64,000 nt of DNA from Setoptus koraiensis (Eukaryota; Animalia; Arthropoda), in the NCBI GenBank assembly GCA_048013815.1, contig CM106585.1:19902001-19966000 (forward strand), written 5' to 3'. Below the pieces are notes generated by a model, which made no database searches, had not been told where the DNA came from, and worked only from the letters and a program-made list of their open reading frames with translations. This document shows, piece after piece, positions 31,094 through 61,200 of this stretch (position 1 is its first letter; each line of letters begins with the position of its first letter). Made by a program: the position numbers and the translations under genes.

Positions 31094-33073
31094 GACGAGG
31101 TCAGAAAAATGCGACACGGTGACAATGAATAAATAGTGACGAGAAGCGAAGTGAAGTGAAGTGAAGTTTTCGCTGATGAAATCGAACTGACAAACAGTGT
31201 GACCAGTGACAGCGGAGTGATAGCAAAGTGCGCCAAAGTGCGTGAGTTACCTGCCGACAATTGTGTGTGTTTGCGTTGCCATGGTGCGCAAATCTCTTGC
31301 TGCGTGCCGTGTGAGCATACAAGAGAAGAAGGCATCTTTTCCCCATTTCGGGATGCTTCGGCAGTGTGTGCTGGCCGGAGTGTTGCGCGACGAACGAGGG
31401 GAAAGCGACTTTTCGAAGCGCAAGCGTTCGACGCGCTGACAACGAACTTGCAGCGGGGGAAAGAGTTTGCTTCGAAACGAAACCACCACAATGCATGCCC
31501 GAGCAGCGATGAACTTGAAATTTTTGAGTCGGCCAGTTCGCCTTTGCCAGTGGCTGCTCACCTCGCCGGCTCAGCCTTGTCTTGTTCGCTTCGAACGCAC
31601 TCCGAGCGCGAACCGAACGCAGCCCGAGCGCGAATTCGGACGCAACAAGTGTCAATGGGCAGCCGAATCGAGCGCGGCCGGGCCGGATTCGGGCCGGGCG
31701 AGAGAGCCCGAAAATCGAACTGCGCACCGGAATTTGCATGCTGAAGCGGTGCTCGCACTTGGGCGCTCGGTCGGAAATTCACCCGGAGTCGAACTGGCCG
31801 GAGATTATGCTTCCGAAATTTCGGATGCACGATCCCAGGAAACAATGTCAAATGATGCCTCACATTGGGGCCAGTGTTTCGCGTATACGTTTCATTTTAA
31901 ATCAATAATCCGGCCAACTTGTGTCTCACAAGTTGTGAGGCTCCGGCAAGGGGCCAAAGGGTCGGATGTGACTATGTTGTGGGCAGGTGAGAATTGGGAT
32001 GCAACGTGAGGGACGTACGAGCTCGCTGTGAGAGGTGAACCCGACCACAGATAGCGGCTCATTTGAATTTCCTAGACGAGCCGCAGCCAGTGTGTGAGCC
32101 GGGCTACAGGGCGAGCGACTTTCAACGGGATTTTCCTGTTTAGTGGTGTGTTGAGTTTGTGTGATCCCATAAATGTCATTAGCATTTATGAGCGCATGCA
32201 TGAAAAAGAAGAAAAAAAAAATGATGATGAAAATCTGTGTGGCCGATATGCAGTGTTGGCTACACCATGACAGCGACTCGGCGATCTCGCCTCGACTCGA
32301 CTCGATTTGGCGCGTCAGCCAGCCTATAACTGGCTTGCCATAATCGGGTGATGATGGCGAGCAGGGGAGCGCTGCATAATGAACAGCAAAATAAATGAAT
32401 CTGTGCTCGCTGTCACTGCCAGCGACAGCAACAACGACGCCGACAACGACAGCGACAAGCACGCCAACAACAACGACAACTGCAGTGCAAACAACGAGAT
32501 GCATTATTACGACGACAGCAGCAACTATAAGCGGCTCACAGTGCGCCAGCAACTGGCAACAAGTGCTGGCAACAGGTTGCTGTTGTGGCAACGTGTCGCG
32601 TCATTGAACTTTCCTCGAGGGTCGAGAGAGCTAACCACACATCGCATCGGCGCTACCTGTGCCAGCGGATTGCGCAATCAAAGCACCATTACGCCAGCAG
32701 TGGCAGCAAGTGGCCAATGGCAAACAACACAAGATTCTCTGCCTGCATTACCTGGGATCACCTGTCCAACTGCGCCAATTGTACACTTACCTGTGCTGCA
32801 GTTGCTTATTATCTGGTGTAGCTGTTTTTGGGCCGTATTCTGGGCAACGTGGCCCGGGTGATTGTGAGTGTGTGTGTCGAATTTAAATCTGGAATATTGA
32901 ACTTGGAACGATGACGCTTCCTAGTGCACTTTTGATCGGCTCTCTTCAACTCTGTTCGGCCTGTTTAGGCAAATTGACGGAGGCGAGTCTCGCTCTTTCT
33001 CGCTTGCTCTTTCTCGCTTGCTCTTTCTCTCCACTGTTGCTGTTTTCGTTCTTTTGGCCGCCGAGCTAACGGC

Positions 33074-33270
33074 AACGACAGCAGCAACAACAACAACAAC
33101 GACCAAGGCAACAACAACGAAAACAGCAACAACAACAACAACGAAAACAGCAACAACAACAACAACGAAAACAGCAACAACAACAACAACGAAAACAGCA
33201 ACAACAACAACAACGACAGCAACAACAACAACAACAACAACAACAACACCGACAACAACAACCACAGCTG
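33074..33270. repeat. (ACA)n-derived compound repeat with a 24-bp superunit
   Basis: acgaaaacagcaacaacaacaaca units; explains the poly-T/V/L/C ORFs in the track. Confidence 0.9.
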
Positions 33271-33704
33271 GAGCAGCGAATGCAACGGAACCAACGGCAC
33301 AAAGAGCGGATTATGCAACAACAACCACCACGACGGGTGTAATGGACGAGAAAGGGAACAAGTGGCCGAGAGTAGAGTTCAAGTTCAGCTGCTGCCGGCT
33401 CGCTTACTTCCTGGTTGCGCAACTCAACTGCAACAAGTGTCCAGCGGCAAACAAGTGATTGTGTAATAAAAGTACAGTTAGCTATTAACGGCAACCTGTT
33501 GTTGCCTGCGCAGTAAGTAAACGCTGCCAGTGGACAGGCCATGTTGTATGGCTGTCCACTGGCAGCGGTTATTTCCGAACAGTTTTCAAAAAGTTTCCAA
33601 ATAGCAGCCAGCGGCAGCAGCAGCGTGCGTTGCGTCATTTACTATTTACAGTTAACTATTTGCAGCAACACTTGTTCTTTTTGCGCACCGTTTCCAGCTG
33701 ACTT

Positions 33705-33850
33705 GTGGCTGTTGTTGCCGTTGTTGACGATGATGATGTTGCCGTTGTTGCCGTTGTTGACGATGATGATGTTGCCGTTGTTGCTGTTGTTGACGGTGAT
33801 GATGTTGATGGCGATGATGTTGACGGCGCTGATGTTGTTGCGGCTGTCGT
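33705..33850. repeat. GTT/GAT trinucleotide-derived low-complexity repeat
   Basis: gttgccgttgttgacgatgatgat-like units. Confidence 0.85.
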
Positions 33851-35516
33851 GGCCGGCCGGGCGTCATGCAACCATCAACCGGCCGATCCAGTGGCCGGTT
33901 GCGAAGAAACTGACAGGCGACCGGCGAGACCGAGCAAGAGGGCCGACGCATCGCAACGGACTGGAAAGGTGGCACGACTCGTCACAGTTTCGTTAGGAAA
34001 AAATCCGCTGAAACAAACCGATCCGCTAGACGCACGCTCCACAGCGATTCACGGCCATTCGTGGTGATTAACTCCATACTATAAACTACAAACTATATTC
34101 TATGAGGTCGAACACACAGTTAATTAGTCTCGCTCGCTGCTGCGAACCTCGGCTCTGGCATCGCCAGCTGTCTGACAACAACAAATATCCATTGAAAAGA
34201 AGCATCAGGCAAAAGTTGGACACAAAATAATCTCATTAGCATATTATCTGCTATCGGATGGCGCTGATCGAGCGGTCAGATGGCTTCATTTGCATGCGCG
34301 TTCGCGCCGATGAGGGCTGCCCATCAACAGACTATCATCGACATTGATTTTTGTCAGCGTTTGCACGCGACCGGCCCTGCAATCCGTTCCACTCGCGTCG
34401 TTCAACTCGTTGGCACGAGATGCAGTTTTTTTTTGAGTTTTTCCCAAACGGGATTCGCTCATTCAATGAGCCTCACTGTGACACAGGTACGAGTTTATTA
34501 TCGGGCCATCGGGCCACCAATAATTCGGCGGCGCGTTGCACGCGCAGCGGTCGCCATAGCGGGACTTTCGATTGGCGTTTCGGTGCGCGTTTCGGTGCGC
34601 GTTCCGAGCTCGAAGTTCGAAGGTTCGAGGCCGGCCCGTTCGCCGGCCGTCCGAACTGGACGGGCGTTCGATTTCGGACCAGTATGTGGCCGGCGAATAA
34701 CTGTAAACTGTTATTTGTCAGATATGCGCACAGCGAGGGAATTTGTGGCCACTTCTGTCGCAGTTGCTGTTGTTGTTGTTGTGCAGTGATTGTTTGCGCG
34801 AATTGAATCAACTGCAACTCTATCATTTCGGACACGGACACGCCAACGGCTACCAACAATGAATTAAATAGAGCAGAGCGCACACCTTTGCCAGTGCAGC
34901 CACACTCAGCACGCTGTCGCTCTCTATTTTTTGCCACTATTATTTCCATTGTTTGTCACCAGAAAACTGGACACTGTTATATCCTACAGAATATATCGGT
35001 TGTGGGGCTGGTCAGCGGCGATATCATCTGATCGGATCACAATGTCAGATCGGCCAGCGGCGGCGTGCTGGCCAGTTTGCGCTAATGGCTGCGTGTGTGT
35101 GTGTGTGTGAATGGACGGACTGGGTAATGAGTTACAAATTCACTTCTTCACAGGGCCCATTCAATTCAATCTGATCTGATCTGATCCGATCCGACTCGAG
35201 CGATTCCATTCACGGGCCGGCCCATTAAAATTAGCGCCAGACTCGCACAAGCGCCAGCTATGCCCACGTTGCGCCCCATGTGGGTGCGTGGGTGAGAGTG
35301 GGCCTATCGATATCACGATGATTTATCATCGTGTAACGAGAGATAACAACCCAGACACGGTCACTCTCTCGAGTTCTGTGCAGCGGCGCGTCCAGTAATT
35401 GGCCCTCGTCGCTTGCGACGAGCCAGTTGAAAATATTTCGGAGCCGCGGAACAGTTCGAACGATTCGGCGGCCAGTTCGACGGCCAGTTCGGAGCGCGAG
35501 CGGGCATTTTCGCGAC

Positions 35517-35593
35517 AAAATCGCGAAAAAATCACGGCAAAATCACGGCGAAATCGCGGTAAAATCACGGCGAAATCACGGCGGAATCGCGAC
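35517..35593. repeat. 11-bp tandem repeat (AAAATCACGGC) x7
   Basis: Seven units read directly. Confidence 0.9.
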
Positions 35594-37542: not shown

Positions 37543-40500
37543 ATCTCCGAGCAGACTCGGCGGCGATCACTTCGGAGTGCCCATTGTGCCGGCGCCGATG
37601 CCCCCGAACAACGACTTCGGGTCGGCGACCTGACTTGGCAGCTCGAACTGACTCAGTGTCGACACGAGCTTGTTTCTCATGGCGTCGCGTCGTCATGCCA
37701 TCGTCACTATCACTAAACTCGTCCATGCATCCATTGACACTGATAAAGTATCACGAACGAGAAAAACTTGCCAGCTCAATTGTCCAGCTAATACTTTTCT
37801 CTGCCGACCATCCCGATGAACTCGGCCGATGCTCGCTAATTCAGCAGCGACAGCAACAGCAGCAACAACAACAACAACGACAACGAAAACAACATGGCGC
37901 TGTGACAGACCAGTGCTATTACGTAAGAGTGGCCACCACCTCCGAAGTGTGTGTGCGTGTGTGTGTGTGTGTGTGTAGAAACCGGTTTTTGCTCATTGTT
38001 GTCTGTGTATCTGACAACACCAAACACTATCTGTCCGGCGCTTGTTTGCGCCTGTCCACTCGTTATGAGCTGGCCTGACTGACACAACATTGCAGAAAAT
38101 TGTTGGGCAGTTTTGTTTGCATTATTTCATATCGCCACCATTTTATTTCCATTTCGAAGCGCCGGCGCGTTCCACGTTGCGCTCGCTTCGCGGCGCACAA
38201 TTCGCGCTCAACAAGCGAATTGTGCCGCCTGCTTACAATCGGCGCTTCCGGCCGCCAGTGTGCGCCTAATGGGCCACTGAGCCGCCCCTCCGCCCGTCGA
38301 TGGTCAGCGTGCGTCTCGTCCTTGAGCAGCGTGGCGAACAATTCGATGCGCGACCTCGCCACTCGGGACGAGTTCACGTTCGAATTCGCGTCGGCGGTTC
38401 GCGTTCGAACTTCGAACGCTCGGCGCGTCATTCGATTCTTCGGGCTTCGGGCTTCGAATTTCGAGCCTCGAGTCTGCGCTTCAAAGTTCGAACTCGCGAA
38501 CTATCCGAGATCGTGGCCAGATGCGCATCGAGACTCGGATTGGCGGTCCGCGAATGTACGATTTCCGCCGATTTTTGCCGATTCGCGCCGATTTTTGCCG
38601 ATTTCCGCGCATAATTGGCGTAGCTCGGAACACCGCGTCCGGCCACCGTGCGAGTCCGACCACTGGACGGCGCCGGAGTTTGCACTTCGAACGCTCTGCT
38701 CGTATTTCGCACACTTTGTTTGTATTGCGAAGGGCGATTTTCGATTTCGGAGCGATTGTGCAATTGCTGCGACGGCCAGCGTGGTCGCAGGCTAACAAAC
38801 GCACACAGCGAAACATTGTGACGAGAGCCGGCCAACAGTGAGCGATAGTGAAAGTTGCTTGCTTGCGCAACCTGCGCTCACCTGTTGCCCGCACTAATAG
38901 TGATGCTGCTGTTGCCCGCACTAATAGTGATGCTGCTGTTGCCGCGATTGTGCAAACTTGTCCGATTGCCAGCACGCTGGTTCGCTGGCAAACAGGACAA
39001 ACACAATAGTCGGTTGTTACGTAACAAGCCGGCGCAGTAGCAGCAGCAGCAGCATGTTGCACTAAAGAGTAAAAAGCGAGCGAACCCTGCGAGGACAACG
39101 AACTTGACCTGAGCGCGGCTCGGTGCGGCGCTTCGCTTGCCCGCGAGTCGGGCGAGCCGGCTCTCGCTTGGGCGGCACGGTGCATGGAATGGCTTCGGCG
39201 TGGTGCATGGAATGGCTTCGCAATGGCGCGCCGAGTGGCTTCGCAAGGTGCCAGTTGGGACAGGCGCCGAAACGAGAGGACGTTTGGCCGGAAAATCTGG
39301 TCGTTGTCGCTTCGCGCATCGGCCAACCCGGGATGCAGTGAGCAACCGATGCAGTGAGCAACCGACAAAGTGGGCAACCGACGGAGTGGGCAACTGATAG
39401 AGTTGCTCACTCTCGCTCGCGAGATCGGGGAGCCGGCAGCAGGCGAGTTGAACAGGTGAAGTCGGCGGAGTTCAAGTTCAGCCAAGACAAGACAATTTGT
39501 TGCAGTGGCTGCGAGTTGTTGTTGTTGTTGCATGATTTCGCATGTCGGAACAGGTAATGGGATGCTGCCGGCGCATTACTATGGCGCGGTAATATGGCCG
39601 CCGCCGCCACACAACGAACAATCCAAACACTTTCTCCAGCAGCAACCAGTTGATTCGAGAGCAGCCCGTCGCTGCTGTTGAGCCGTCGGACAGGTGAACT
39701 CAGGCGCTCAGGTGAACTCTCTCACATTTAGTCTCGTAGGCTGGCTGCATATTGTGCTGCTGCAGCCATTAGACTTTAGAGAAATTGTGTTTATTATTGT
39801 GGGCACGCTGCCTGCGAGCTAGTCGGCGCCGTGTTGTGTCGTCACCGCGGCACTTGTGCACACGAAAACGACCATCATTTGCTTACGTCATCACAAACAC
39901 ACACACACACACAATCGCAACTTTCGCACCAACTCTCGCTGGCCGCCTCACCTGAGCTCACCTGGTCAGTTGCCAATTCTTCAGTGTTCAGAGTTGTCTG
40001 TTGTGCGACTTGTTAATCACACAAGGCGCTCGCGATAAAACTCGCAAAGAATGCTGCTCCGGCTGCCGCCGGCCGCCGACGATGAAAGTGACGCCACCAG
40101 CGCAATTAGAGGGCGCTTGCCGGCCGGCGCGGTCAAGCTGCCGGCCGGGGTCAGTGCTCGATCGGCTTGACTAGCCGTGGCCGGCGATACTGTGGCCATA
40201 CCGTGGCCATACCGTGGCGATACATCAATAGTAACCAATAATGTCGCAGCCATGGGCGAACCGACCGGCGGCCGGCGCCGATCTGGCGGCCGAGGCCGGT
40301 CGCCGGAGCTCGGTTTTGCCCGTCGAGCCCGCTCAATGTCACTCGCGGGCTGAAAACGAAAGCTGCGCGGCTCGGGCTCGACGACCCGGCGCGAGAGTCC
40401 GCGCTGCTGGCGGCGACAGCGAAACAGCCGCCAACGCGGGCAGCCGCGGACGTTTGTTTGCCGGCCGAACAGGGCTCGCTCGCCGGCGTCGTGTGACGGC

Positions 40501-41729
40501 GCTGGCCAGTGGTCAGTGAACTCGCGCGACCCGCCGAGCAGTACGCGCCCGAGAGCCGCCCGAGAGCGTTTGCATAATTACGGCGCCACTGGGAGACTTT
40601 CGCGGCTCAGCTTTCGCTGCCCCCGAACTGGCCGCTCTCGCTGAAGTGGCCGCTCTGGGCGCTGTTGTCGGGCGCGGAGGCAGTCGAGATTGGCGAAGAG
40701 CGCCGAATAGCGCTGAATAGTGCCGAGGAACGCCGAGGAACGCGAACGAGATTGTTCTCGCGGCGCTGCCGGCGCGTTCGCGACTGCGACTTGACCGAAC
40801 CCAAATTGCGAAAAAGGGCGAGCAGAAATAGGCGAGAACAGACGCGAGAGAGCGCACACAAGAGGAGCAACATGAGACAACAGACCGAAGCGAAGAACAG
40901 AAGCGAAGAATCCGAGATGCCGAAGAAGCGAAGATTCGGAGCGGCCGAAGAGGCGAAACCGAAAGTTGACTCTGAACCGCACAAGCCAGTTGCGAGTCGC
41001 TGGTTGCGTGGGCGTTTGCGCGGCCGGCCAACGCTAACGAGCTACAGGTAAGCGCCAGCACTCACTGCATATCTGGCGTTTATCGGCACAATGGCGCTGA
41101 CAACGTGCCACCAGTGGCATATGCTAATGCGTTTGCGCGTGCTGCGACGTGCACTTTTTTGTTTGTGCGTCCACTGCACAACAATGTTTGCTTCGTCAAT
41201 GTGTGTGCGTGTGATCCAAATAACGGTCAGTAAACCCATTTATTGGCTGGGGCCGAGCAGTGGCAGTCGAGTTCTTATGGCTTCTTGCGGGCCAAATGCT
41301 GGCGGCCGTGGCTTGTCGCCGACAACGCGGGCTCGGCTATAAAGTTTATAGTGCAATTTCGCGAGTCACTTTCTTGTGATCGCTTCGAGCGCACCGATGG
41401 AACCGGTCGAACCCATGGAGCCGGCCGAATCGATGGAACCGATCGAACCGATCGAATCGATAGAACTGATCGAGTCGACCGAACGCCGCGAACGCTTCCA
41501 ACGACTCGGACGAATAATTGGAATTGCTGCGTGCTCACACGAGCGCGGCGCAGGAAGAGAGAGAGAGAGCGCCGAGGAGCTAGAGGTCAACGAACTGGCT
41601 GGTTGTTCGCGGGCACGCACTAAATCGCGTGCTGTTCGTGCGAGAGCGCCTTTTGTGCGAGTGGCGTTGTTGCGCACTACAGGCTGTAGTGCTGTAGTCT
41701 ACAGCAGCACCGTTGCAGTTTCTTCGGTT

Positions 41730-42182: not shown

Positions 42183-42428
42183 TTACAACGCTCGCCCGCT
42201 TGGCCACCTTTGCTGACCCAGTTGGGTCATTGAACCATCAATGACGAGCTTGCAGCGCCCCTTGGGGCCAGCACAGGTATCTCGTCTGGTCAGCGGCATG
42301 CGGGGCTTCTTCGGGCCCGAGTGGCCGTCGCATGTGGGGCCCCCGGTGAACATGAACTTGAATATGATATTGGCTCGATCATGAATATCGCAGTTGAATT
42401 TTTCGTTTTGTGCACGCTCTTGTGACAC
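42183..42428 (-). CDS. Unidentified coding-like segment (candidate exon or small ORF): ..DRANIIFKFMFTGGPTCDGHSGPKKPRMPLTRRDTCAGPKGRCKLVIDGSMTQLGQQR
   Basis: Non-repetitive open frame with strong C/G third-position bias; boundaries and identity not established. Confidence 0.4.
   Translation of the reverse strand: MSQERAQNEKFNCDIHDRANIIFKFMFTGGPTCDGHSGPKKPRMPLTRRDTCAGPKGRCKLVIDGSMTQLGQQRWPSGRAL
42214..42236. promoter_or_regulatory. Composite nuclear-receptor element TGACCC-AGTT-GGGTCA-T-TGAACC (IR1, EcRE-type, plus an everted half-site)
   Basis: Exact match to RG(G/T)TCA-N-TGA(C/A)CY at 42224-42236; function untested. Confidence 0.45.
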
Positions 42429-45419
42429 TTTGCGTCACTGGTCAGTTGCTTGTCACTGCATGACGCACTCGTTGTTGCATAACGTGCAAACACGCGCACA
42501 ACAGTGACAAGCGGCAACAGTGACAAGCGGCAACAGTTACAACGGACGATCAATCAATCGCAGTAGCGGCAGCACCACGTGTTGCATATTTGCAACATTG
42601 TATTGTAGCGCGATGGACATTTCATCATCAACTAGCAGCGATTGCATCATTTATTTATATAATCATAATATCGTTATGTTGTATAATGTTATCCAAATTG
42701 ACAGTCATCGGCGAGTGGCATGTTTACACTGGCTGCTGTTTCACAATCTGCGCAACAATCTGCAACAAAGTATATTAAATCGGATCACGTTTGCCGAAGC
42801 GATATTTTCGAGCATGCATTATGTAAGACTTATATCATACTCTATTTTACTTTTTTTTATATTAAGTTATATGCTGAGAATAATAGAATTTAACATAATA
42901 ATATCATCATGTTGAAAAATGAAATGTTGCCCGAAACGAAACGCAGTTTTCAAATATGAGACGGCGAAGCCAGGCAACTGTCGCCAATTGTATCTGGCGG
43001 CATCGGTGCAAGGTAACGAGAGCACTTGAACTCGACGAGAAGCCCAATCCATCCATCATGTTATGTTGTGCAACATCATTATTGTCCATGGGTAACTTTG
43101 CAGTTTGCAACAATTATCATCGTTCACGATAATCATTCATGACAATCATTTATGATGATCGAGATGATATCGCAAGACATGTGCGCTCTTGTGATCATCT
43201 TTGAATGATCTGAATGATAAAATTGACCTTTGAATGGTGATCGCTGGCATCGACTGGCATTTGGGCCCCATCTGACCATTGAGAGGCCATTCGGAGGGGC
43301 CCAAATGGCAGCGTTTGTAACATTTGTCATCGCGCTCGTGGCGCCACCACTTACGGCTGACCGTTCGCGGCAGCTCGCTCTTTGCTGAGGAGTCTTTGGC
43401 GCTTATTTTCTAAGCTCTATTTTCTAAGACTGGAATTATTCAGTCACATTTGATCGGGCGAGCCCCACTTAATCGCTCAACCAATTAGCTTGCTCGTGAT
43501 TAAATCGCTTAATCAATTAACTCGACTGTGATTATATCATTGAATTAATAAACTCGCTTGTGATTAGATAATTGAATCAATTAACTCGCTTGTGTTTGAA
43601 TCGGCCAATCAGGGGAGCCAATTTCAATGGAGGAGCCTCTATGGAGAGGACGAGATCGCCTCGGATTGTAACTGCGGCGGCTCGGTGACATTTCGTCACA
43701 GTTACCGACAAGTTGCGAGTGGACAAGCGCGACAAGCGAAAGTTGGCCAGACGAGGTCACGGTCAATGTCATCGGTTACTTTCTCTCGTGCGATTGATTG
43801 CGATTGTTAATTGTGATTAATTGAGTGACATGCTTATTAACAAACTTTCTGATGACTTTCTCTCTCGTTTGTCTGTTGGCCATTGTTGCAATTAGCCAAT
43901 GTTTGCGCATTGAATCAACACATGACAAACAACAAACAAATGGTGACGCGAAACACGTAGGCAGCGATATCTATAATATATACAAATATAAATTGCAACA
44001 ATATTGTTGTATCATGCTACTCATATATCTATACATATAACTGATCAAATATGGTCGTATAGATATGATTGTATCTTGCAAACAGCAATCGTCCAATTGC
44101 CAATCAACAAGTGCCAATGTTTATTTATATATTGTTTGTGTCCAATTGACTGCTGCTGCTGCCGCCGAACAATTAGTCACAACGATTATTTACTGCGATT
44201 AGACGTCTCGAGATTATTATCTGGTCGAAGCGTCAACATTTTCACACATCGATGCACGATTTACAGATTGCGCTTGCAGATTCAATTGTGCTCATTTGCA
44301 TTCGACGCTCATTGTGTCCGATTGTGTATGAAACGGCCAGGTCACGTAGATAGATTTTGGTCGAGTATTAATTAACCAAATCAATTCTAAACTAAACAAA
44401 CTACGTTTGCATGTTTGGCCGTCGCCGTCGCTGTCGCTGTGACGAAACGAGAAACAGACAGAGCAGATTTGTTCAATGAGCGAAATGAAATTGCTTCTCC
44501 ACTTTGTCGGGCACCGGTCAACGAGTTAATTGGCTCACTTTCATTGGGTTTGCATTGACAAAGTGGCACTTGTTTTTATCGGTGCCACTGGTCGCCAACG
44601 GTGTTAATTGGCCGCCGACACTGGACACTGTGTGCTGTTGATTGTGATTCTGATTGTGGCCACTTACTTGCAATTAACAACATTTATTCGGACCACCAGC
44701 GCGCTGCGTTTTCTGTTTGCGACCATAGTTGTCGACCCGAAAAACACACCAAACTCACTATTCGCCAGAAAACCTTGACAAGACAAAAGCCGAATATCTC
44801 CCGTTTGGCCCGCAACCCGATTGCCCCGAAACAAGACGAACAGACTGTATCTGGCTGGTCGTCACCTAGGTGCCAGTTGGACAGCACGTCGTTGTAAATT
44901 GTCAAATTGTCACAAATTGTGCACAGATTTTCAGTTGTGCACTCTCACAACTTGTCAGTGGGCAGCGGACAGTGTTTGTTTTACAGCCAGTCATTTGGCG
45001 CCTGCGCCCCGAACAAATAACCAGCCATCCGGAACTTGCTCACCTGTGCGCCGCGTTTTTTAGAAAAAAAAACGCGTTTTATAGAAAAAAAAACGCGTTT
45101 TATGGAAAAAAAAAATTGCGCCCCCTCCAATTCGACACCGGCTCGTTTGACAGCAAAGTGACAGCAGTGACGGCCGATCGAAGCCACAGTGACACCGGTT
45201 ACCTGTTGCGCCCGAGCGGCCCAAATTGGTTTTTTGGCAGCGATTCGCCGGTTTCGGGTTGACAATTTGCTGTTTTCGCTTTTTTATTGCCTGCCTGTTT
45301 GTTGTTGGGCGCGCTCATTTTTTAGCGCCGACGCCGCTTCTATTCCATTTATTGGTCGCGATCTATTTTTGGCCGAATGCACCGAGTGGGCGCGCTGCCA
45401 ATTTGCAATCTGATCCGGA

Positions 45420-49688: not shown

Positions 49689-50481
49689 ATTGCCATTTTC
49701 TCGAAGTATTCCGATTCACAATCGCGCACAGTTGTCGCCTGTTTTCGCGAATGACCCCCGCACGTACTGCTGACCAGCGGCCAGCAGTACGTGCTGCTGG
49801 ACAGCAACTGGCCAACTCGCTGGCCTCTCATTTGCGCCCTCTAATTTTCGTGTGTCATCAGTCAAAACATTGGCTCGCGATTGTCAGACGTCTGTCACCA
49901 TCAGCTGTCACCAGCAGCCCGCGATTGACACATCCGCTGGCCACTGCAGCGCTCGATACTCACATATCCCTATATCACTCACATATCCATCCATGAATGG
50001 ATATAATGAATGGATGGCTTCATGAACAGTGGCGAGTGCAGCGCGAATAGCGCTCGTTCGAGTCAGCCCGTGCATTTGTTGGTGCGAGCTTGCCAGCGAC
50101 ATGCCGCCGACAATCGCACAAAATCCGCAAAAATCTATCTGTAGCTGCGCCTGTCAACGGCTATAGATAGCTCGTCGACGGGCTATAATTAGTCGCAGTG
50201 AGCCGTGCAAATCCAGTGCCGCGCACTCTCCAGTTGGGAGGCCTCGAAACTCGAGGCTCGAATCGTTTCGAGCTGACATGCCGTCACGTGCATCGGCTGC
50301 AAGTGTCAGCGTGATCTGATTTCTGAAATGCGATTTCATACACGTTGCACATATATTGCGCCACTATTTGGATTTGTGGCAGAAATAATCGTCATTTGTG
50401 GTAGAGATAATATTGACAAAAATTAAATTGATTAAATTTCGATAAAATCGTACACGCACGTAAAGCAAAAATTAATCAAAA

Positions 50482-50814
50482 ATGAACTGCAACTTGTTGC
50501 TCGCATTCACCTGTTGCCTGTGCTGGGCAGTTTGGGGCGCATCTGGTGAGCTTCAATTGGACGCCAGCGACCAGTCTAAATTGGACGCTTTGAGAGAGGA
50601 TCGCCAATTTATTCTGCGGGACATGCAACGCATCAAAGATCTGTCAAGATCTGGCGCTGGGCCCGCGAACAATAGCGCCAATAATAAGGCCAATAATGAG
50701 GCCAATAATAGGGCCAATAATGAGGCCAAGGATCTATTCGAATACAAACAAATGCTGGATGAGATCGCCGACGAGGAGAGCCAGTTGCAAGCGCAGCTCG
50801 TTGCGTCCAAATAA
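50482..50814 (+). CDS. Small secreted orphan protein, 110 aa, helical with an internal 12-bp (ANNx) repeat
   Basis: CAAAA-ATG context after an AT-rich upstream stretch; signal peptide MNCNLLLAFTCCLCWAVWG; non-repetitive charged helical sequence. Confidence 0.75.
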   Translation: MNCNLLLAFTCCLCWAVWGASGELQLDASDQSKLDALREDRQFILRDMQRIKDLSRSGAGPANNSANNKANNEANNRANNEAKDLFEYKQMLDEIADEESQLQAQLVASK

Positions 50815-52535
50815 ATGGCAACTAATGACGCACAACGTGCTATTAAAAGATGACGATTTTCAGCGCTGAACTTGAAAATTTCAGTTTCAATTTCAGGTTT
50901 CAAGAATATTTTTGCATTTGTATGAAACGAATTGCATTCAAATCTATTTCTCCAAAACGCGATCTCGCCGATGACATCATCAAGCAGCTCGTGACAGCAG
51001 CCTGAAAGATGATTAAGCGCAGACCAAAAGCCAAAAAGTTGTCCGTTAGTCGACGTCAAAGCCTTTGACTCAAAGGTGATTAGAAATCGCTGATGAGCTG
51101 GTGCGCTGATGAGCCGATCTTTATTCCGATTCGGGCCTTCATTATGCGAAGTGATTGTCGTGTCTCACCTGTAAGCTGCAGGTTGCAACACTGACAACTC
51201 TTGTGAGCGAGCACTGAAATATCATACTGTTGAATATTTCAACAGTATGATTTAAGGGTGAGTTACGTGACACGTTGATTCACAATCACAAGTGATGCAT
51301 CACCTTGAAATAGCTTTAGTTGTAGCCAGTTATTTGTTGGCCGTGATTCATCATTGGCCGGCTGACAGTTTGCATTATGCGTTAGAGTTAAAGTTTGAGT
51401 TTGAGTTTGAGTTTGAATGCACTTTTGACAGCCACTCAAGAGAGTGTGTGTTGCGGTCACTTCCAGTTGCGCCTGTAAATTGGCGATTGCATAACTGCAA
51501 ACTGCCGTACACTGTGTGTTACGATTATAGCCGAGTTACAATCGAGTCAAAAGTCCTTTTAGAGTCTAGCGAATAACGGTGCACTTTTGCGAGCGAATAG
51601 CCAAATGAGAATGGCCGCAACAAGAAGCTGCATAGACGCTGCATCGAGTGCATTACAGGTGATTAGAGGTCAAATGGTCGCCTTTTGCCGCGGCTACTCG
51701 TTGCGATATTATTGGCGTGTAGTGAAGTGAATTGTTGCGAGTGGGCCGACTAATACTCTTCGATTGCTCACTCGACGATCGATAGGTATTAGTTGGCCAA
51801 AGAAGAGCCGTCTTAAATTAGAAATTAGAGTTGAGAGCTCGACAGGAAGCGGGCACGAGAGCCCGACGATCGATTGTGCAAAAAGCAACAATCGATCCGA
51901 GCTGTCAAGTGTGTGTGTGTGTGTGTGCCCAATGTGTGTACAGGTGACCAATCATGGCAACGTTTGCATCATATCTAACAGTTATCTAACAGTTATCTGG
52001 CAGTTGGCTAACAATTTTCGGCGTTTGTTGTGGCGCCGTCGAGCGGCCGTTGAGCTGCAACCGGACGCGAATAACGGCGCAAACAACGACGCCAGATAAT
52101 CATTCTCATACCAGACGCAAAGTCGCAAAGTCGCAATGAAGCCATGACGCAATGCGGCTACTTACACTGGACGTAGCGCAATATTCATCTCAAAATTAAG
52201 ATGATTTGCCAAGATAGGAGAATGTCGAGCAGAAACGAAACAAGTTTTTGTTTCGTTTTTCATGCCGTGCTTTGTGCTGTTGTGCTGGCAGGCGCATGTT
52301 ACGCAACAACTTGCTCTCTCATCATGATTCATGGCCGCATTGCGCCATGAATTAGAGTTGAGAGTTAAAACAACTCTCAACTGTGCAGTCTGTGCAGTAG
52401 TTGACGAGTCTCTCATTTGCTTGCAGCGACAAGCACAGCGTAAATAACGGTGCCCATAATAAATAAAGCAACAGAGGCTTGCGCAACTTTGACTCTTGAA
52501 CTTGACTAACTTTTATGCTCGGTGTCCATTTACCT

Positions 52536-53700: not shown

Positions 53701-55435
53701 GCGTGTTGTTGCTCTCGGTGTTGTTGCGCAACACACAAAGGCAGCGAGCGGCGCAACTAGGAAGTAAACTTGAACTTGAACTCTCTTCACTCTCTGCAAC
53801 TGGCCGCCCCCAAACAGCTACAAACAACGGCAGCAGCAGCAGCAACAGTTACAGTTACAGCAACAGGTTGTTGCTTTTTTTATAATCCCGCACTACAATC
53901 TAACTGTATACTATGACGCAATATGTTTATAATGATGATGATGATGATGATGCAACTGTGCATCACTGACTCCAGCGGTGCGGCCAGCTCATCGCCGGTC
54001 GCTTTCCACTTTGGTGTGTGTAGCCAAAAGTGGCCAAAAGTGGCCAAAAGTAGACGCATTTGCGTTCTCTCTCTGCCCGTGAACTGAGTGTGTTCTTTGT
54101 TCTTCGCACACTGCACTGATTTGAACATGGCGACCGAAAACTATAAGCCAACAATCGACCGCAACAAGCGCGCCAGTAATGATAATAATTGCGCCTCGGT
54201 CGATCTATCACACACACACACACACACAACTGTTACGTCATAACAGCGCTTCGTTACGTAACACTGGTCGGTTGTGTGTCAGATGATTGCATCATCATGA
54301 TCAAGCGCTGCAATCATGCAACTCGTACCTGTCCATCATCGTCAGCGACAGGTAAATCGGCGCAAGCAACGACAGCGACACGACAGCAACAACGGCAACG
54401 ACGGCAACAACAGCGACAACAGCGACACCAGCGACAACGGCGACAACAGCAACCACTGCAACAGGTGCGAAGAAAGGACAGAGCTGGCTAACAGTTGTGA
54501 GCTGGCAGCAACAGGTTCAACAGGTGATAGCACACACACAGTGTGATTAGCACACTGACTTGTGAGGATATCAAACAGTTGATTGTAATCAGCTGAGAGA
54601 GTAGCGGCCATTGCACAACAGCATCAGCCTGTGTGTCGTTGGACAGGTGAGACCGTTACGTCAGCCAGCTTGGTCACGTAACACTTGAGCTGGGCTACCT
54701 TTGCATGCGCTGGCCAGGCTGTTGTGGCCAAAAGTGGAATTGAACTTGAACTCGGCTTAAGTCACCTTGATCAGTGGCAAGCCACTGACGAGCTACCTTG
54801 TAACGTTGCTGTTGGCATTAGTGTTTGCTGGCGCCTCTCTACTATCTATTGCTATTACTATTACTTGTTGTTACTATTACTTGTAGTTGCCCATTACAGT
54901 ATTACTGTAATAGCAACTGTAGTAACCACAAGTAATAGTAACACAAGGCCGCTCTAGACTCGAGTAGCCCGCTCGTATAATTAGTAGACCGAGTTACGTA
55001 AGCAACCTAAGCTTGCCAGGCTACGTAAACAGACAAGAGTACACAGCGCGACAGGTAAAACAACTACTTTTATAAGTGCATCTCCTATAGAAAAAAAATA
55101 AAAATAAAAAATAAACGCTATACTTGTGCTGCTGCCTCAATATAAACACAGAGTTAAAAGTTATGTTTAGAAACGGAGAGAATCCCCGAGATTCTCGAGA
55201 TTCTCGACTCGACAAAGAGCCAGCGAGAGAGCATTTGAACTCTTATTTATTATTATTTGGGTGAATCTACTTGCCCTCTCACTTCCTGGTTCCGGGTTTC
55301 GCTCGTTTGATTCGACGTTGGCCAGCGAAGAGTAAAAAGCAAACGTTTGCGTTTGAGCCAACGCCGAGCCGAGCGTTGTAAGAGCAACAACCGTTGTTGT
55401 TGTTGTTGTTGCTCTTACAACAACAACAACGGCAA

Positions 55436-55470
<35 letters not shown>

Positions 55471-55627: not shown

Positions 55628-55696
55628 TTATTCGCCAGCTGATTTGCCAGTTATTCGCCAGCTGATTTGCCAGTTATTCGCCAGCTGATTTGCCAG
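55628..55696. repeat. 23-bp minisatellite x3 (TTATTCGCCAGCTGATTTGCCAG)
   Basis: Three identical units. Confidence 0.95.
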
Positions 55697-56432: not shown

Positions 56433-56478
56433 TGAGCACAACTGAGCACAACTGAGCACAACTGAGCACAATTGAGCA
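56433..56478. repeat. 10-bp repeat (TGAGCACAAC) x4.5
   Basis: Read directly. Confidence 0.9.
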
Positions 56479-57345
56479 AGCGACAATAGATTCCGTTCAT
56501 TCAATAGAGGGCCCCGTTCATCTGCGCCGGTGATTCGGCGGCGAATCAGCGGCGACTACCGTTATCCGTTCGTTGCCCGCTAAACCGTTCGCTGCTGAGC
56601 GAAACAGGAAGTGAAGATTGTCTCCGGCTGGAATGGGTGAATTTTGGCGTCAATTCACCTTTGCTTTAAAAGAGTTCACTGCCACTATAAAATACTACAC
56701 ATTATATAAGATCCGACACAAACGACAAACAACACGGCACGACGCGCAGAGAGTGTTTTGGTCACAGGCGCCTCTTGCGAGCGTGTGAAAGGGCTCAAAA
56801 GAAGTTTCTTCTAACGCAACATCATTGTTGCATCATACTTGTTGATGCACACTATGTGCAGTGTGTTATGCAACCAATGTCACTGTTATGCAATGTCACC
56901 GTTATGCTGCTGTTGTTGTTGTGCAACTCTCCTGTCACACTCACCGACGCTGGCGTTTGCTGGTGTTACTCTACCGGTGTTACAGTTACGTGTGCAGTTG
57001 TTGTTGTGCAATTTTGTGTGAGAATGTTGTGCAACAATTTTCTAGCAGTTTCCAAACACACACACACACACTGTTGGAATAAGAATTGCGTAACAGCAGC
57101 AGCGGCAGCGGCATTGCATAATCTTATTTTAAATTGCAAACAGTGAACGCTGTTGCGTCCACATCAGCTGTTGCAGTGGACGCCACGTTATGCAACAGCT
57201 ACAAGACACAATGCAAGGTCGACATAAGGTCCACTTTGCATGCCATGCACCGCGCTGCCAATTGTGAGAGATGATACACCGTAATCAGCTATTCACACAT
57301 CACCCATCAATTGCCTATTTTGCTCATATGTGACATATTCATTGC

Positions 57346-57450
57346 TGATATATTCACGGGTGATATATTCACGGGTGATATATTCACGGGTGATATATTC
57401 ACGGGTGATATATTCACGGGTGATATATTCATAGGTGATATATTCATAGG
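57346..57450. repeat. 15-bp minisatellite (TGATATATTCACGGG) x7
   Basis: Five identical units plus two variant units. Confidence 0.95.
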
Positions 57451-58190
57451 CCCACGAGAGATTCACCATTGGCTTGCGCTAGTCATCGCTAGCACTGTGT
57501 GCGGATAATGTTTGCTGATAAATGTTTGTAAACGTTTCGGCAACAACACGCTGTACAAGATTCACGCGTGAACTTGTGACAAAAGTGAACTCGAAATGTA
57601 CACTTGGATTGCGATACAGGGCTTCCGGTTGCGATACACCACGCGAACTGTTGGCGTGGAGCTCACTAGCCACTGGAATAGCTCGATCAGGGGCTCCAGC
57701 GCCCCTGAGATTGCGCAATTGTGCGGCCACCAGGTAGCGAGCGTACAATTAGGTGAGTACATATTGCTCCAACGTAATGGCGATCGAGCAAACCGTTAGT
57801 GCAAAACTGTCGCCCATTGTGTCGCCTCACTTGCCGTGCTCAACATTGAGTATGTTGTATGGATGTTGTGTGTGATTATACAACATGTCGGCGGCGGCGG
57901 CCCAATGTGTGGGAAAATATCGACTGGTGACTTATGATGACGCAACTGTCTCTACTTACCTCATTCTGCATACATTACACGCTGCATGTATGTACATATT
58001 GTGTGACGCAACCAAATGAATACTCATACCGCACACTGGTGCATTATGGCATTTGGCATTATGTATTGAAAACATTGCATAATGCACGTACTTTGTCACA
58101 GATCTGCTCGCTGCTGCCCGACAGAGCGCGCTCGTGACGCCTAAATGGCTGGCTGGTCGCTGCCGGGGTCATTGCGTCATCGGCACCATT

Positions 58191-58276
58191 GGTGACGATC
58201 GGGGGCCGCTGGTGACCGTCGGCGACCGTTGGTGACCGTCGGGGACCGTAGGTGACCGTCGGGGACCGTAGGTGAC
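58191..58276. repeat. 20-bp minisatellite (GGTGACCGTCGGGGACCGTA, 10-bp subunit) x4
   Basis: Read directly. Confidence 0.9.
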
Positions 58277-61200
58277 GGGGTCAAGCGGGCGCTTGTTTGG
58301 GGTTCGGAGTGTGGGGGGGGGGGGCAAGCTGACAAAATTATTATCACCATTTTTTGTGTGCATTTTGTTGCACAGAATGCACACAAATACAACAGAATGA
58401 TCACAATGATGTGCACCAGAAATGAATAGCCAGCAGCCCGGCCTGTGCCGCCCATCGCTATCGATGGGCGGCACAGGGGGAAAATATGCAAATTGGTGGC
58501 CATCTATTGGTTCACCGTGTGCGTTACCATTTCGCTGCAACCAGTCAAAGCAGGTGAACCAGACGCTTTTACATAAATTGTATACATAAACTGGCATACA
58601 TAAACAGTGATTTTGACTGGCTCGCCCATGAAAATACTGCAAATATTACGTATACGTACAACAATCTATGATGATAATAATAATAATGATAAGCTAGTTG
58701 CGCTTCGGCCGGCCAGAGGGGGCGGCCGGCGCTGTTACGTAATCGCACAACACACTCACTGGCAACAGCGAGCCAAACAGCGACTGTTACACAGACAGGT
58801 GAGTTAGCCGAGGAGGCAAGCGACACACCAACACGACAGCTGGTGTCGGACGGAGCAGGTAAGGGGGCAACACGAGAGGAGTGAGAAAGAATTCAATCAA
58901 TTGACTGCGATTGTGCGCTGCTCGCTGAGTGACTAACATACACACTGTCAATACACATTGTGGCTCATACGCCGCGGCTCTATTACTCGGACGGTCACAT
59001 CTCAGGTGAGGTCGGTGACCCCAGGTGAGTTGTGCTTGTTGTTGGTGTGTGTGTGTGTTGGCGCTTGTGCGGCCAGTGCTTACGTAACTTACGTAACGCA
59101 AGTCGTCGGTGTGTTCGTCACTCGTGGCACACAAGCACACACGCCCGCATCACACTGGCAGCATCACACAGACTTGCACATAAATTGTTGTGTTACGTAA
59201 CTCACGGCAGCGGCAGCAGCAGCAAACTCACCTGTTGCAGACGAGTCCACGGCGCAACAATTTCGCCAGTGCCTATGCCACGCAGTGCAACGCAACATAA
59301 GTTATGTTACATAACCTGTTGTGTGCGGCGCTTATCGTTGCATGACTACTATTATGTAATGGTCGTCTTTGTGTTGCGCTCACTGGCTGCCGAGCTGCTG
59401 AGAAAAGTTTCTAGAGTTCATTTGTCTCTTTCACTTAGAAACTTTTGGCTCAACTCGCCAACTGCACGCTACGTGCCGCTGCTCACGTCACCGGCTCAAC
59501 CGCTGACTCACCTGGCGGGCCTTTTCGACAACAACTGACTGGCAGCAACGTCAGCACCGTTCTAGGAAGTTTGTGGCCAACGTGAACTTGAAATCATCTC
59601 GATGTGAACTCCTTTGAGCTGTGCGTGTGTTGCGTCATATCTGGCGCAATTATTGTGAGCAATTACTGTGCGAATCTCGCGCGCTTGTTTTGCGGCGCTC
59701 ACAATAATGCGCGGCGCTGACCGGCGCCGACTGTGCCGAGTACAGTCTGACGAGTCGAGTCTGACGAGTGGCCAAATTGCAAATCTGACCGCTGCACAGC
59801 CGGTGACGCGCTCGCTCGGCACAGGCGAGCAATCGCTGCGACTTGAGCAATTGCAACTCGCCACTTGAGCGCTTGAGACGCACCCGCCACTGGCGGCAGC
59901 ACCGTCGCAACCGGGCAAAACCGGCCCACAGGTGAGCCAGCAAACAATGCATCACTTCGGCCAGGCCAAGCAGTTGACTCAGCGAGCCATTTGAGCCGCT
60001 GGCGGCCATTACGTATCGGCAACATTACGTAACATCAACATTGCGTAGCAGCAACATTGCGTAACAGCGACACTGCATAGCAGCGACATTGCGTAACAGC
60101 TTCGCGTCGCGTCGCCGCTCACTTCTGGTTCCGAGCGGCGCATCCGAGCGGCGGGCTCCGTCCGGCGGCCCGATGAAGCCCGGCGACTCAGCGGCGGCGG
60201 CTCAGCGGCGGCGGCTCAGCGAGCGCGGCCAGAGAGATGTGAAAGTTTCGATGCTCCTTGCGAGGTCAAGTTCATTGGCCTTTCTCTCACTGCCAAGTGC
60301 GAGTCGCTCAGGTGATTTGTTGGCCGGCCGCGCGTCGGTCAAACGGCCGATCGCCGAGACGCGGCGGCGCCCGGATGCGGCCCGCCGGGCCGCGTCATCC
60401 GCCAAGTGGCCCCCGCAAGACGCGGCGCCGTTTGCGTGGCGGCCCCTGTCGCGCCAGTCGGGCGTCTCAGCGATCCGCTGTGCACAGCGTTTGACCGGCG
60501 GGCGATTGCGGCCTCCCGCACAATCAACGAAAATCGTCGGACCGGGCACGTCGCGGTCGCGCCGCCACTTGCCCGAGCCGAAGTGAACAGCAGCGGCGAA
60601 CAAACGGGCAACATGCGCACAACATCCGGCGCAACAATTCGATCGAATCCGATTGGAGGGCGACAAGCGCGCACCAATCAACAGAGGAAACCGGCCGCGC
60701 GAGATTGCGTGGGAGTGGAGCCGGCCGAAAGGGAAACGTTGACGCACCGTCGGGGGAAAGGGCTGCCGCAGCTCAGGTGAGCGCCCCCATGCACACGTTA
60801 TGCGAGGTTATGTGACACTTTTTGTTTGTGTCGTGCTCGCTCACTGGCTGTTCGGTGTGTTGCTGTGCTGTTTTGCGCACTTTTCACCGCACTCCTTCTG
60901 ACCTTGCGACTCACAAGTTGTGAGTGCGCAGTGTGCGCCGTCCGCTACTTTTGCTTGTTCTGTACCCATAACTCACTCATCGTGCACCAGTGCCAATGAA
61001 CTCTGCCGGGGGGGACGGGACGGCACTCACTGCGCAACAGGCTGCTGTTGCTGCCGTGCGCCGGTATGGCACCAGCACAGTGCAGTGGACGCTGTCACAG
61101 AGACAGCTGTGAGTGAGTGTGAACACGGGGGAAGGAACTGGTGATGCGGAGCGTAGTGAGGTGCGCCAAAGAGTGAGTGGCCCGCTTTCGCACACTGTCA

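What the first reader, a model, noticed from the sequence alone, without database searches (positions are those of the whole stretch)
31510..60274. Recurrent nuclear-receptor DR0/extended half-site (GAGTTCAAGTTCA; core TCAAGTTCA) upstream of Blimp-1: candidate moulting-timer input
Seen: the exact 13-mer GAGTTCAAGTTCA at 33375 and 39468 (+) and 53771 and 54741 (-); variants GAGGTCAAGTTCA (60262), AGGTCAAGTTCG (39099, -) and AGGTCACGGTCA (43754). The 9-mer core also occurs at 31510, 42353, 50867, 52497 and 59583: ten in total versus ~0.25 expected at uniform composition, and none noticed in 1-31 kb. Known: GCNF/NR6A1 binds DR0 and TCAAGGTCA; HR4 is its arthropod ortholog; FTZ-F1 binds TCAAGGTCA-type sites; Drosophila Blimp-1 is an ecdysone-induced repressor that times ftz-f1. 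Inference: a homotypic NR array wiring Blimp-1 into the moult cascade, with a G-to-T variant site that might reflect a mite-specific receptor preference (AGTTCA half-sites also suit NR1I/J, HR96-like receptors).
Basis: partly seen in the sequence, partly recalled or inferred. Interest (0 to 1): 0.7.

Follow-up and report, generated by a model that had tools for sequence, protein, structure and literature searches.

The report
Receptor-site cluster between two Blimp-1 genes
A short DNA word that looks like a hormone-receptor docking site is packed, as nowhere else in this mite genome, into the 35 kb between two back-to-back copies of the moult-timing gene Blimp-1, so it is probably a regulatory switchboard, though no protein has yet been shown to bind it.

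Summary
GAGTTCAAGTTCA occurs 14 times in the 48.8 Mb genome. Six copies lie in this one locus: four in the window and two about 2.4 kb beyond it. A seventh lies 5.5 kb upstream of the E75 DNA-binding exon. Of 99 genome copies of RGKTCAAGTTCA, 10 fall in 33 kb here; no other place has more than two. The flanks are unrelated, so this is not a transposon.

The interval is not simply "upstream of Blimp-1". It lies between two divergent Blimp-1/PRDM1 paralogs of an eriophyoid mite. The densest array sits 200-283 bp before the start codon of the five-finger copy.

Canonical EcR-type palindromes are also enriched, 7 against about 1 expected. An ETS-like word accompanies three sites.

The exact 9-mer is not conserved in two related mite contigs. 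Its core GAGTTCA is enriched upstream of their Blimp-1 genes (P about 1e-6 each). It is not enriched at control loci or in two more distant mites.

Best reading (0.55): a homotypic cluster of nuclear-receptor response elements feeding moult-hormone timing into both paralogs. Which receptor binds is unknown, and binding is untested. This is a new member of a known kind, of moderate interest. The scan had not noted this motif elsewhere.

The parts
29998..30855 (-). Blimp-1 paralog A, first coding exon. The ATG is at 30855 and the exon ends with zinc finger 1.
   Evidence: Pfam zf-C2H2 hit. BLASTP against paralog B shows 69% identity over the [12 protein letters not shown]...THTGE block and conserved N-terminal blocks.
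29708..29875 (-). Blimp-1 paralog A, small exon encoding zinc fingers 2-3.
   Evidence: Frame translation and coordinates. It is 96% identical to the matching exon of paralog B.
31510..31518 (-). Core TCAAGTTCA, 655 bp upstream of the paralog A ATG.
33375..33414 (+). Composite element: 13-mer GAGTTCAAGTTCA at 33375-33387 followed by the ETS-like word ACTTCCTGG at 33406-33414.
39099..39110 (-). DR0 variant AGGTCAAGTTCG.
39468..39480 (+). 13-mer GAGTTCAAGTTCA.
40510..40523 (+). EcRE-like IR1 palindrome TGGTCAGTGAACTC. Read on the minus strand it begins with GAGTTCA.
42224..42236 (.). Perfect match to the EcR/USP IR1 consensus RGKTCANTGAMCY (GGGTCATTGAACC).
42353..42361 (-). Core TCAAGTTCA.
43754..43765 (+). 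DR0 variant AGGTCACGGTCA.
50867..50875 (-). Core TCAAGTTCA, about 40-50 bp past the end of the contigs that cover the small ORF at 50482-50814.
52497..52505 (-). Core TCAAGTTCA.
53757..53783 (-). Composite element: 13-mer at 53771-53783 followed by ETS-like ACTTCCTAG at 53757-53765. It is the mirror-orientation counterpart of the composite at 33375.
54741..54753 (-). 13-mer GAGTTCAAGTTCA, followed by TTGGCCACAA at 54722-54731.
59562..59591 (-). Composite element: core at 59583-59591, then TTGGCCACAA at 59571-59580, then ETS-like ACTTCCTAG at 59562-59570.
60262..60289 (+). 28-mer holding a DR0 (AGGTCAAGTTCA) that overlaps an IR1 (AGTTCATTGGCCT). It is duplicated exactly at window-equivalent 65006.
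   Evidence: The IR1 differs only in the spacer base from the Bombyx EcRE probe AGTTCAATGGCCT.

Best explanation
The 35-kb interval is the shared regulatory region of two head-to-head Blimp-1/PRDM1 paralogs in an eriophyoid mite.

It carries a homotypic cluster of nuclear-receptor-type response elements built on the half-site AGTTCA. Three forms occur:
- an extended half-site or zero-spaced direct repeat, (G)AGTTCA-AGTTCA
- single GAGTTCA units
- EcR-type inverted repeats

The likely mechanism is that moult-hormone-cascade receptors dock on these sites and switch both Blimp-1 copies on or off at set phases of the moult. Candidates are EcR-RXR and/or orphan receptors that accept DR0 sites, such as HR4/GCNF, SVP/COUP-TF or FTZ-F1. 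E75 appears to be controlled through the same word.

Shown here: the enrichment, its uniqueness in the genome, its position between the paralogs, its presence at E75, core-motif enrichment in two related genomes, and co-enrichment of the EcRE consensus.

Inferred: that any receptor binds, which receptor it is, and that the output is moult timing.
For: 1. Enrichment and uniqueness. Six of 14 genome copies of the 13-mer and 10 of 99 copies of RGKTCAAGTTCA fall in 33 kb, against 0.07 expected. No other place in the genome holds more than two. The 9-mer is about 21 times denser here than genome-wide. GAGTTCA occurs 23 times in 35.8 kb against 3.5 expected from the genome rate.
2. Not a repeat family. 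The flanks are unrelated apart from low-complexity CAA repeats and one duplicated 69-bp segment. The sites have mixed orientation, which fits recognition at the DNA level.
3. Position. The interval lies between paralog A (ATG at 30855, minus strand) and paralog B (ATG at L001:2672, plus strand). The densest array is 200-283 bp before the B ATG.
4. E75. One of the 8 remaining genome copies of the 13-mer lies 5.5 kb upstream of the DNA-binding exon of the E75 orthologue, whose best solved-structure match is NR1D1 at 5.6e-37. A second site, GAGTTCAaTCAAGTTCA, lies 2.1 kb further on.
5. EcRE consensus. RGKTCANTGAMCY with at most one mismatch occurs 7 times in the interval. Markov simulations gave a mean of 0.77, and 239 kb of other DNA from this genome gave 0.29 per 10 kb. 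One match is perfect, and three include the AGTTCA of the motif.
6. Relatives. GAGTTCA is enriched upstream of Blimp-1 orthologues on two related metagenome contigs. L013 has 9 against 1.07 expected (P = 2e-6). L022 has 5 against 0.17 expected (P = 1e-6). It is not enriched in the control loci L010, L011, L003 and L009 or in window 1-30.8 kb. L013:5000-5640 holds five GCCGAGTTCA-type units, including GAGTTCAAGGTCG.
7. Composite grammar. Three of the 4 ACTTCCTRG words in the window lie within 30 bp 3' of a core site, in the same orientation.
8. Literature. AGTTCA is a used EcRE half-site (PMC3531340 and PMC7905918). DR0 is bound by GCNF, COUP-TFs and RAR/RXR (PMC4446430). Eriophyoids retain EcR, RXR, FTZ-F1, HR96, HR4, SVP and E75 (PMC7738191).
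Against: - There are no binding, chromatin or expression-timing data.
- The exact 9-mer and the DR0 form are not clustered in the relatives, which have one copy each. Two more distant mite loci, L109 and L110, show no GAGTTCA enrichment.
- Part of the count comes from tandem and segmental duplication.
- The other seven singleton 13-mers lie next to genes with no evident moult role.
- The canonical high-affinity word for FTZ-F1, ERR and GCNF, TCAAGGTCA, is absent from the locus.
- The E75 co-occurrence was found after the fact, by looking among about 18 receptor genes. Its chance probability is about 0.035.
- At least one other probable gene lies inside the interval, the small ORF at 50482-50814, so Blimp-1 need not be the only target.
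Confidence: 0.55

Rival explanations
1. The sites are functional cis-regulatory elements, but they are read by a factor that is not a nuclear receptor. An example would be a multi-zinc-finger or other protein that recognises GAGTTCA(AG). On this reading the resemblance to receptor half-sites is coincidental.
For: The conserved unit across the three genomes is GAGTTCA with a GC-rich 5' context. That context is not a classical A/T-rich monomer-receptor extension. The 13-mer is kept strictly, six exact copies, which is tighter than most receptor sites. Other words are also enriched here, TCACCTGT and TTACGTAA, which shows a dense enhancer landscape with many inputs.
Against: Canonical IR1 EcRE matches that reuse the same AGTTCA half-site are co-enriched. 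The same word is present at E75. No known non-receptor motif was found to match; this rests on my own recall and was not tested against a motif library.
Confidence: 0.2
2. The cluster is a neutral by-product of local mutation. On this reading hexamer slippage, minisatellite birth and segmental duplication, in a region unusually rich in tandem repeats, spread one word through the locus.
For: TRF lists 97 tandem-repeat rows, most of them in 30-64 kb. The array before paralog B is (TCAAGT)x4.2 plus a 23-bp unit x2.5. The sites at 60262 and 65006 are a duplicated segment. The 13-mer is itself a two-unit hexamer repeat.
Against: About 11 sites have unrelated flanks. Old duplicates that have lost all flank similarity should also have lost an exact 13-mer, unless it is under constraint. 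Slippage does not explain why the same hexamer arises repeatedly only here, among 99 genome sites. It also does not explain the enrichment of GAGTTCA upstream of Blimp-1 in two other genomes or the linked ETS-like word.
Confidence: 0.12
3. The sites are auto- or cross-regulatory sites bound by the Blimp-1 paralogs themselves. AGTTCAAGT resembles the PRDM1 core AGTGAAAGT at 7 of 9 positions and has the same 6-bp periodicity.
For: The positional similarity to the PRDM1 core (my own knowledge of that motif), and the location between the two Blimp-1 genes.
Against: The canonical AGTGAAAGT is not enriched, with 1 copy in the interval. The zinc-finger recognition segments ([40 protein letters not shown]) match those I recall for vertebrate PRDM1, so a changed specificity is not expected. 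The motif also occurs at E75.
Confidence: 0.04

Closest known systems
Ecdysone response elements (EcR/USP-RXR; consensus RGKTCANTGAMCY) at primary-response genes such as Blimp-1 and E75 in insects
   Same: The RGKTCA half-site with T at position 3 is used, and AGTTCA is a documented EcRE half. IR1 consensus matches are enriched in the same interval. The target genes, Blimp-1 and E75, are classical ecdysone-cascade genes.
   Different: The dominant recurrent word is a zero-spaced direct repeat or extended half-site, not an inverted repeat. No hormone or binding data exist. The host is an eriophyoid mite, whose moulting hormone and receptor specificity were not examined here.
DR0 / extended half-site elements of GCNF (NR6A1; arthropod HR4), COUP-TF (SVP) and NR5A (FTZ-F1, TCAAGGTCA)
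   Same: The geometry is the same: two half-sites with no spacer, equivalent to TCA plus a half-site. DR0 is the only over-represented spacing in the interval, with 10 against 1 in the control half of the window.
   Different: The half-site is AGTTCA rather than AGGTCA. The canonical TCAAGGTCA is absent from the locus. The site has a conserved 5' G, and the receptor is unidentified.
Homotypic clusters of transcription-factor binding sites in developmental enhancers and shadow enhancers
   Same: There are many copies of one short word spread over tens of kb around a developmental regulator. They have mixed orientation and linked partner motifs, and only the motif vocabulary is conserved between species.
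   Different: The interval serves a divergent paralog pair, and one dense array lies directly at a promoter or 5' leader.

Membership tests
EcR/USP-type ecdysone response element | Two RGKTCA half-sites as an inverted repeat spaced by one base (RGKTCANTGAMCY) | tested here: inconclusive
   The recurrent 13-mer is a DR0, not an IR1. However, 7 IR1 matches with at most one mismatch (one perfect) occur in the interval against about 0.8-1.05 expected, and 3 of them reuse the motif's AGTTCA.
EcR/USP-type ecdysone response element | Bound by the EcR-RXR/USP heterodimer and confers hormone inducibility | not testable with these tools
   This needs EMSA, DAP-seq or a reporter assay.
GCNF/HR4 DR0 element | Direct repeat of the half-site with zero spacing | tested here: met
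   There are 10 DR0 pairs of RGKTCA in 30.8-66.6 kb against 1 in window 1-30.8 kb. No other spacing from 0 to 10 is enriched.
GCNF/HR4 DR0 element | Half-site AGGTCA, with extended site TCAAGGTCA | tested here: not met
   The sites read AGTTCA. TCAAGGTCA has 0 copies across the window plus 10 kb.
FTZ-F1/NR5A response element (YCAAGGYCR) | GG at positions 5-6 of the 9-mer | tested here: not met
   All core sites read TCAAGTTCA.
Homotypic binding-site cluster | Significant local over-representation of one motif with unrelated flanks | tested here: met
Homotypic binding-site cluster | Motif enrichment retained at the orthologous gene in other species | tested here: inconclusive
   The core GAGTTCA is enriched upstream of Blimp-1 in L013 and L022, with P about 1e-6 each. 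The 9-mer and DR0 forms are not. Two more distant mites show nothing.
Transposon- or SINE-derived repeat | Extended similarity of flanks among copies, and dispersed genomic distribution | tested here: not met
   Flanks are unrelated. Copies are concentrated in one locus.
Micro- or minisatellite | Head-to-tail copies of a unit | tested here: inconclusive
   This holds for the array at L001:2389-2501. It does not hold for the roughly 10 isolated sites, which have only two hexamer units.

The most novel reading that the evidence does not exclude
Eriophyoid mites may use a lineage-specific response element, GAGTTCA, elaborated in this species to the DR0 form GAGTTCAAGTTCA. It would be the shared cis-code of the moult timer, linking a duplicated, PR-domain-less Blimp-1 pair with E75. 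One candidate class is the orphan receptors reported to lack a recognisable ligand-binding domain in this lineage (HR4, SVP, E75).
Probability: 0.15. Interest if true: 0.6.

Novelty: new member of a known kind. Interest (0 to 1): 0.42.

Why it matters
If the sites are bound, this locus is a compact and unusually clear entry point into moult-cascade wiring in eriophyoid mites. These are very small animals with streamlined genomes and a reduced receptor set, and no moult enhancer has been described for them in the papers I searched. One 13-base word marks the Blimp-1 pair and E75 and is otherwise rare: 14 copies in 48.8 Mb. That makes it directly testable by EMSA, DAP-seq and reporter assays. 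It could show whether EcR-RXR or an orphan receptor such as HR4 sets Blimp-1 timing outside insects. If the sites are not bound, the finding is an oddity of local sequence evolution.

Tried and rejected
- **Transposon or repeat origin: rejected.** BLAST of ±250 bp around each site found only CAA-type low complexity and one duplicated segment.
- **Known RNA families:** none in the window.
- **RNA-level motif: unlikely,** because the sites have mixed orientation.
- **PR/SET exon for Blimp-1: not found.**
  - Regex scan of 29-74 kb.
  - PF21549. The tool's own control also found nothing for this model, so that search is uninformative.
  - PF00856: 17 hits in the genome, none near the locus.
- **Conservation through public runs: not obtained.** Contigs of runs X7-X9 matched exactly, but only at 50341-50831 and at a CAA repeat. 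They appear to be the same species, so they gave no cross-species information.
- **Exact look-up of window proteins:** not in the collection.
- **Closest relative (Rpc1 93% identical):** its contig ends 396 bp after Rpc1, so there is no Blimp-1 side.
- **JGI relative L011:** synteny is not kept; tetraspanin follows Rpc1.
- **Protein search with the low-complexity N-terminal region of paralog B:** nothing found, because the candidates were flooded.
- **Neighbours of the other seven singleton 13-mers:** no obvious moult genes.
- **Blimp-1 autoregulation through the canonical PRDM1 site:** not enriched.
- **tRNA B-box, heat-shock, STAT, p53, NK-2 and IRF motifs:** considered from memory and set aside as poor matches. 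None was tested against a motif library.


Full report
**Observation**

The exact 13-mer GAGTTCAAGTTCA is at 33375 and 39468 (+) and at 53771 and 54741 (-). None of 100 dinucleotide-preserving shuffles produced a single copy. The 9-mer core TCAAGTTCA occurs ten times, all between 31510 and 60274, against a shuffle mean of 0.84 and a maximum of 3. When all 9-mers in 31-68 kb are ranked by the number of dispersed copies, this word is the highest that is not a CAA, CAG or CA repeat.

**Is it specific to this locus?**

The window is C1:19902001-19966000 of a 48.76-Mb assembly.
- The 13-mer occurs 14 times genome-wide. The reversed control word occurs 9 times. Six of the 14 lie within 33 kb here: four in the window and two at window-equivalent 66445 and 66468.
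- The degenerate DR0 word RGKTCAAGTTCA occurs 99 times, and 10 of those are in C1:19935376-19968480. Everywhere else there are singletons and a few pairs. A random 33-kb stretch would be expected to hold 0.07.
- The 9-mer occurs 1041 times, or 0.21 per 10 kb. Here there are 16 copies in about 35 kb, 12 of them dispersed.
- GAGTTCA occurs 4834 times, or 0.99 per 10 kb. Here there are 23 in 35.8 kb.

It is not met.

**Not a repeat family**

The flanks of the sites do not align. BLAST of ±250 bp around each site finds only CAA-type low complexity and one duplicated segment of about 69 bp shared by 60262 and 65006. That segment contains exact 28-mer and 18-mer matches. The interval is very rich in minisatellites. 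The array just outside the window is itself partly tandem: (TCAAGT)x4.2 plus a 23-bp unit x2.5. Allowing for this, about 11 sites are independent.

**Gene context**

The left half of the window holds five genes:
- a CD36-family gene
- a QVR/Ly6 gene
- a cullin
- the largest subunit of RNA polymerase III (Rpc1)
- on the minus strand at 29998-30855, an exon ending in the first zinc finger of Blimp-1/PRDM1

The DNA beyond the window was fetched as L001, which is the window coordinate plus 64000. It shows a second Blimp-1 gene on the plus strand:
- ATG at L001:2672
- exon 1 running to 5014 and ending in finger 1
- a small exon at 5281-5451 encoding fingers 2-3
- fingers 4-5 from about 5714

The two proteins share the N-terminal blocks and the [12 protein letters not shown]...THTGE block. 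Database hits to the finger-1 region are named PR domain zinc finger protein 1 across arthropods. Paralog A also has a fingers 2-3 exon, at 29708-29875.

The interval therefore lies between two divergently transcribed Blimp-1 paralogs and is upstream of both. The densest array, L001:2388-2510, lies 200-283 bp before the paralog B ATG and about 85 bp after a TATA-like TTTTATAAAT. Its placement as promoter or 5' leader is an inference. No PR/SET exon was found.

The interval is not empty of other genes. A 110-aa ORF with a signal-peptide-like start, at 50482-50814, is covered by exact contigs from two public runs.

**Organism**

Rpc1 is 71% identical to the Aceria tosichella protein. It is 71-73% identical to many unnamed contigs and 93% identical to one unnamed run. 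More distant mites score 57-60%. The genome is that of an eriophyoid mite, and the long intron-free ORFs fit this.

**Extra evidence on what the sites are**

1. *E75.* Among about 18 nuclear-receptor DNA-binding exons in the genome, one lies 5.5 kb downstream of a singleton 13-mer. That exon's best solved-structure match is NR1D1/Rev-erb at 5.6e-37, and it carries the ...AVRFGRVPKREK continuation, so it is the E75 orthologue. The same upstream region holds GAGTTCA 15 bp before the 13-mer, and a GAGTTCAaTCAAGTTCA element 2.1 kb further on. Seven of the 14 genome copies of the 13-mer therefore sit at two classical ecdysone-cascade loci. This was found after the fact. The chance of any singleton lying within 6 kb of any receptor gene is about 0.035.

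2. *Site geometry and EcRE consensus.* DR0 is the only enriched half-site spacing: 10 in the interval against 1 in the other half of the window. The canonical EcR/USP inverted-repeat consensus is also enriched. It has 7 matches with at most one mismatch, one of them perfect at 42224. Markov simulations gave a mean of 0.77, and 239 kb of other DNA from this genome gave 0.29 per 10 kb. The duplicated 28-mer reads AGGTCA-AGTTCA-T-TGGCCT. Its right part differs only in the spacer base from a Bombyx EcRE gel-shift probe (PMC3531340).

3. *Partner motif.* Three of the four ACTTCCTRG (ETS-like) words in the window lie within 30 bp 3' of a core site, in the same orientation. Two of these composites, at 33375 and 53771, share a 17-mer and lie in mirror orientation on the A and B sides.

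4. *Related genomes.* Blimp-1 loci were recovered from metagenome contigs.
   - In L013 and in L022 the exact 9-mer occurs only once upstream. L012 is the same sequence as L013.
   - GAGTTCA, however, is enriched upstream of the gene. L013 has 9 against 1.07 expected (P = 2e-6), and L022 has 5 against 0.17 expected (P = 1e-6).
   - It is not enriched downstream of L022, in the second paralog L091, in control loci of the same metagenome or of the closest relative, or in other DNA of this genome.
   - L013:5000-5640 looks like a module, with five GCCGAGTTCA-type units (one reading GAGTTCAAGGTCG) and CACCTGT boxes like those in this locus.
   - Two more distant mite loci that still carry a PR/SET exon show no enrichment.
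   - The conserved unit is therefore the 7-mer. The DR0 form is a feature of this species.

**Literature**
- AGTTCA is an accepted EcRE half-site (PMC3531340 and PMC7905918).
- DR0 is a bona fide site for GCNF and COUP-TFs, is bound by RAR/RXR, and resembles the NR5A/ERR monomer site (PMC4446430).
[quoted passage not shown] It also has E75, DSF, HR4, HR38, HR51 and SVP without a predicted ligand-binding domain (PMC7738191).
- That Drosophila Blimp-1 is an ecdysone-induced repressor timing ftz-f1, and that HR4 represses early genes, rests on my own knowledge. I did not check either point in a paper here.

**Interpretation**

The best-supported reading is a homotypic cluster of nuclear-receptor-type response elements in the shared control region of the two Blimp-1 paralogs, tied to the moult cascade (confidence 0.55). 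The receptor is not identified. EcR-RXR is favoured by the IR1 co-enrichment and the AGTTCA half-site. An orphan DR0 binder such as HR4 or SVP is favoured by the dominant geometry. FTZ-F1 is disfavoured because its canonical word is absent and the site has T where it needs G.

The rivals, with confidence:
- a non-receptor factor, 0.2
- neutral local duplication and slippage, 0.12
- Blimp-1 autoregulation, 0.04; the canonical PRDM1 word is not enriched

**Limits**
- There are no binding, chromatin or timed-expression data.
- Only the 12-mer and 13-mer have complete genome-wide position lists.
- The planned survey of all receptor loci could not be run.
- The relatives are distant, so conservation is at the level of motif vocabulary, not aligned sites.
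- The exons of the Blimp-1 models were searched one at a time by reference and were never joined.

**Verdict**

This is a new member of a known kind, of moderate interest.

Noticed in passing
window 29708-30855 (-) and L001:2672-7456 (+): There are two divergently oriented Blimp-1/PRDM1 paralogs about 36 kb apart. Paralog B encodes fingers 1-5 over three exons. Paralog A has fingers 1-3 and then a stop. No PR/SET exon was found in 29-74 kb, and there is no SET hit anywhere near the locus. A more distant mite contig (L109:9149-9553) does keep a PR/SET exon just upstream of its finger exon.
   Followed up: partly
window 50482-50814 (+): A 110-aa ORF with a signal-peptide-like start and an asparagine/alanine-rich middle lies inside the 'desert'. 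Contigs from two public runs cover 50341-50831 with 0-3 differences, so it is probably a transcribed small secreted-protein gene. It has no Pfam match.
   Followed up: partly
window 30.8-64 kb and L001:1-2600: Other words are also over-represented in the interval relative to other DNA of this genome. TCACCTGT (Snail/E-box-like) has 19 copies, about 2.6 times the background. TTACGTAA (PAR-bZIP D-box-like) has 12 sites, about 2.9 times the background. Both are common genome-wide, so they are far less specific to this locus than TCAAGTTCA.
   Followed up: partly
L093:1996-2032 (C1:6427996-6428032): Four tandem GGTCA half-sites with T-rich spacers (GGTCAttttGGTCActttGGTCAttcGGTCA) lie upstream of the E75 DNA-binding exon. 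They sit between the two AGTTCA-type elements found there.
   Followed up: no
window 30963-31095: A 13-bp unit (GGATGCGTTTTTC) repeated about 10 times lies between the paralog A ATG and the first motif site. The whole 30-64 kb interval carries dozens of short minisatellites.
   Followed up: no
window 39695-39720 (-): GAGTTCACCTG occurs twice, 18 bp apart, fusing the GAGTTCA core to a CACCTG E-box.
   Followed up: no
L098:1-930 (C1:3042001-3042930): One genome copy of the 13-mer lies inside a patatin-like phospholipase ORF, so not every copy is regulatory.
   Followed up: no
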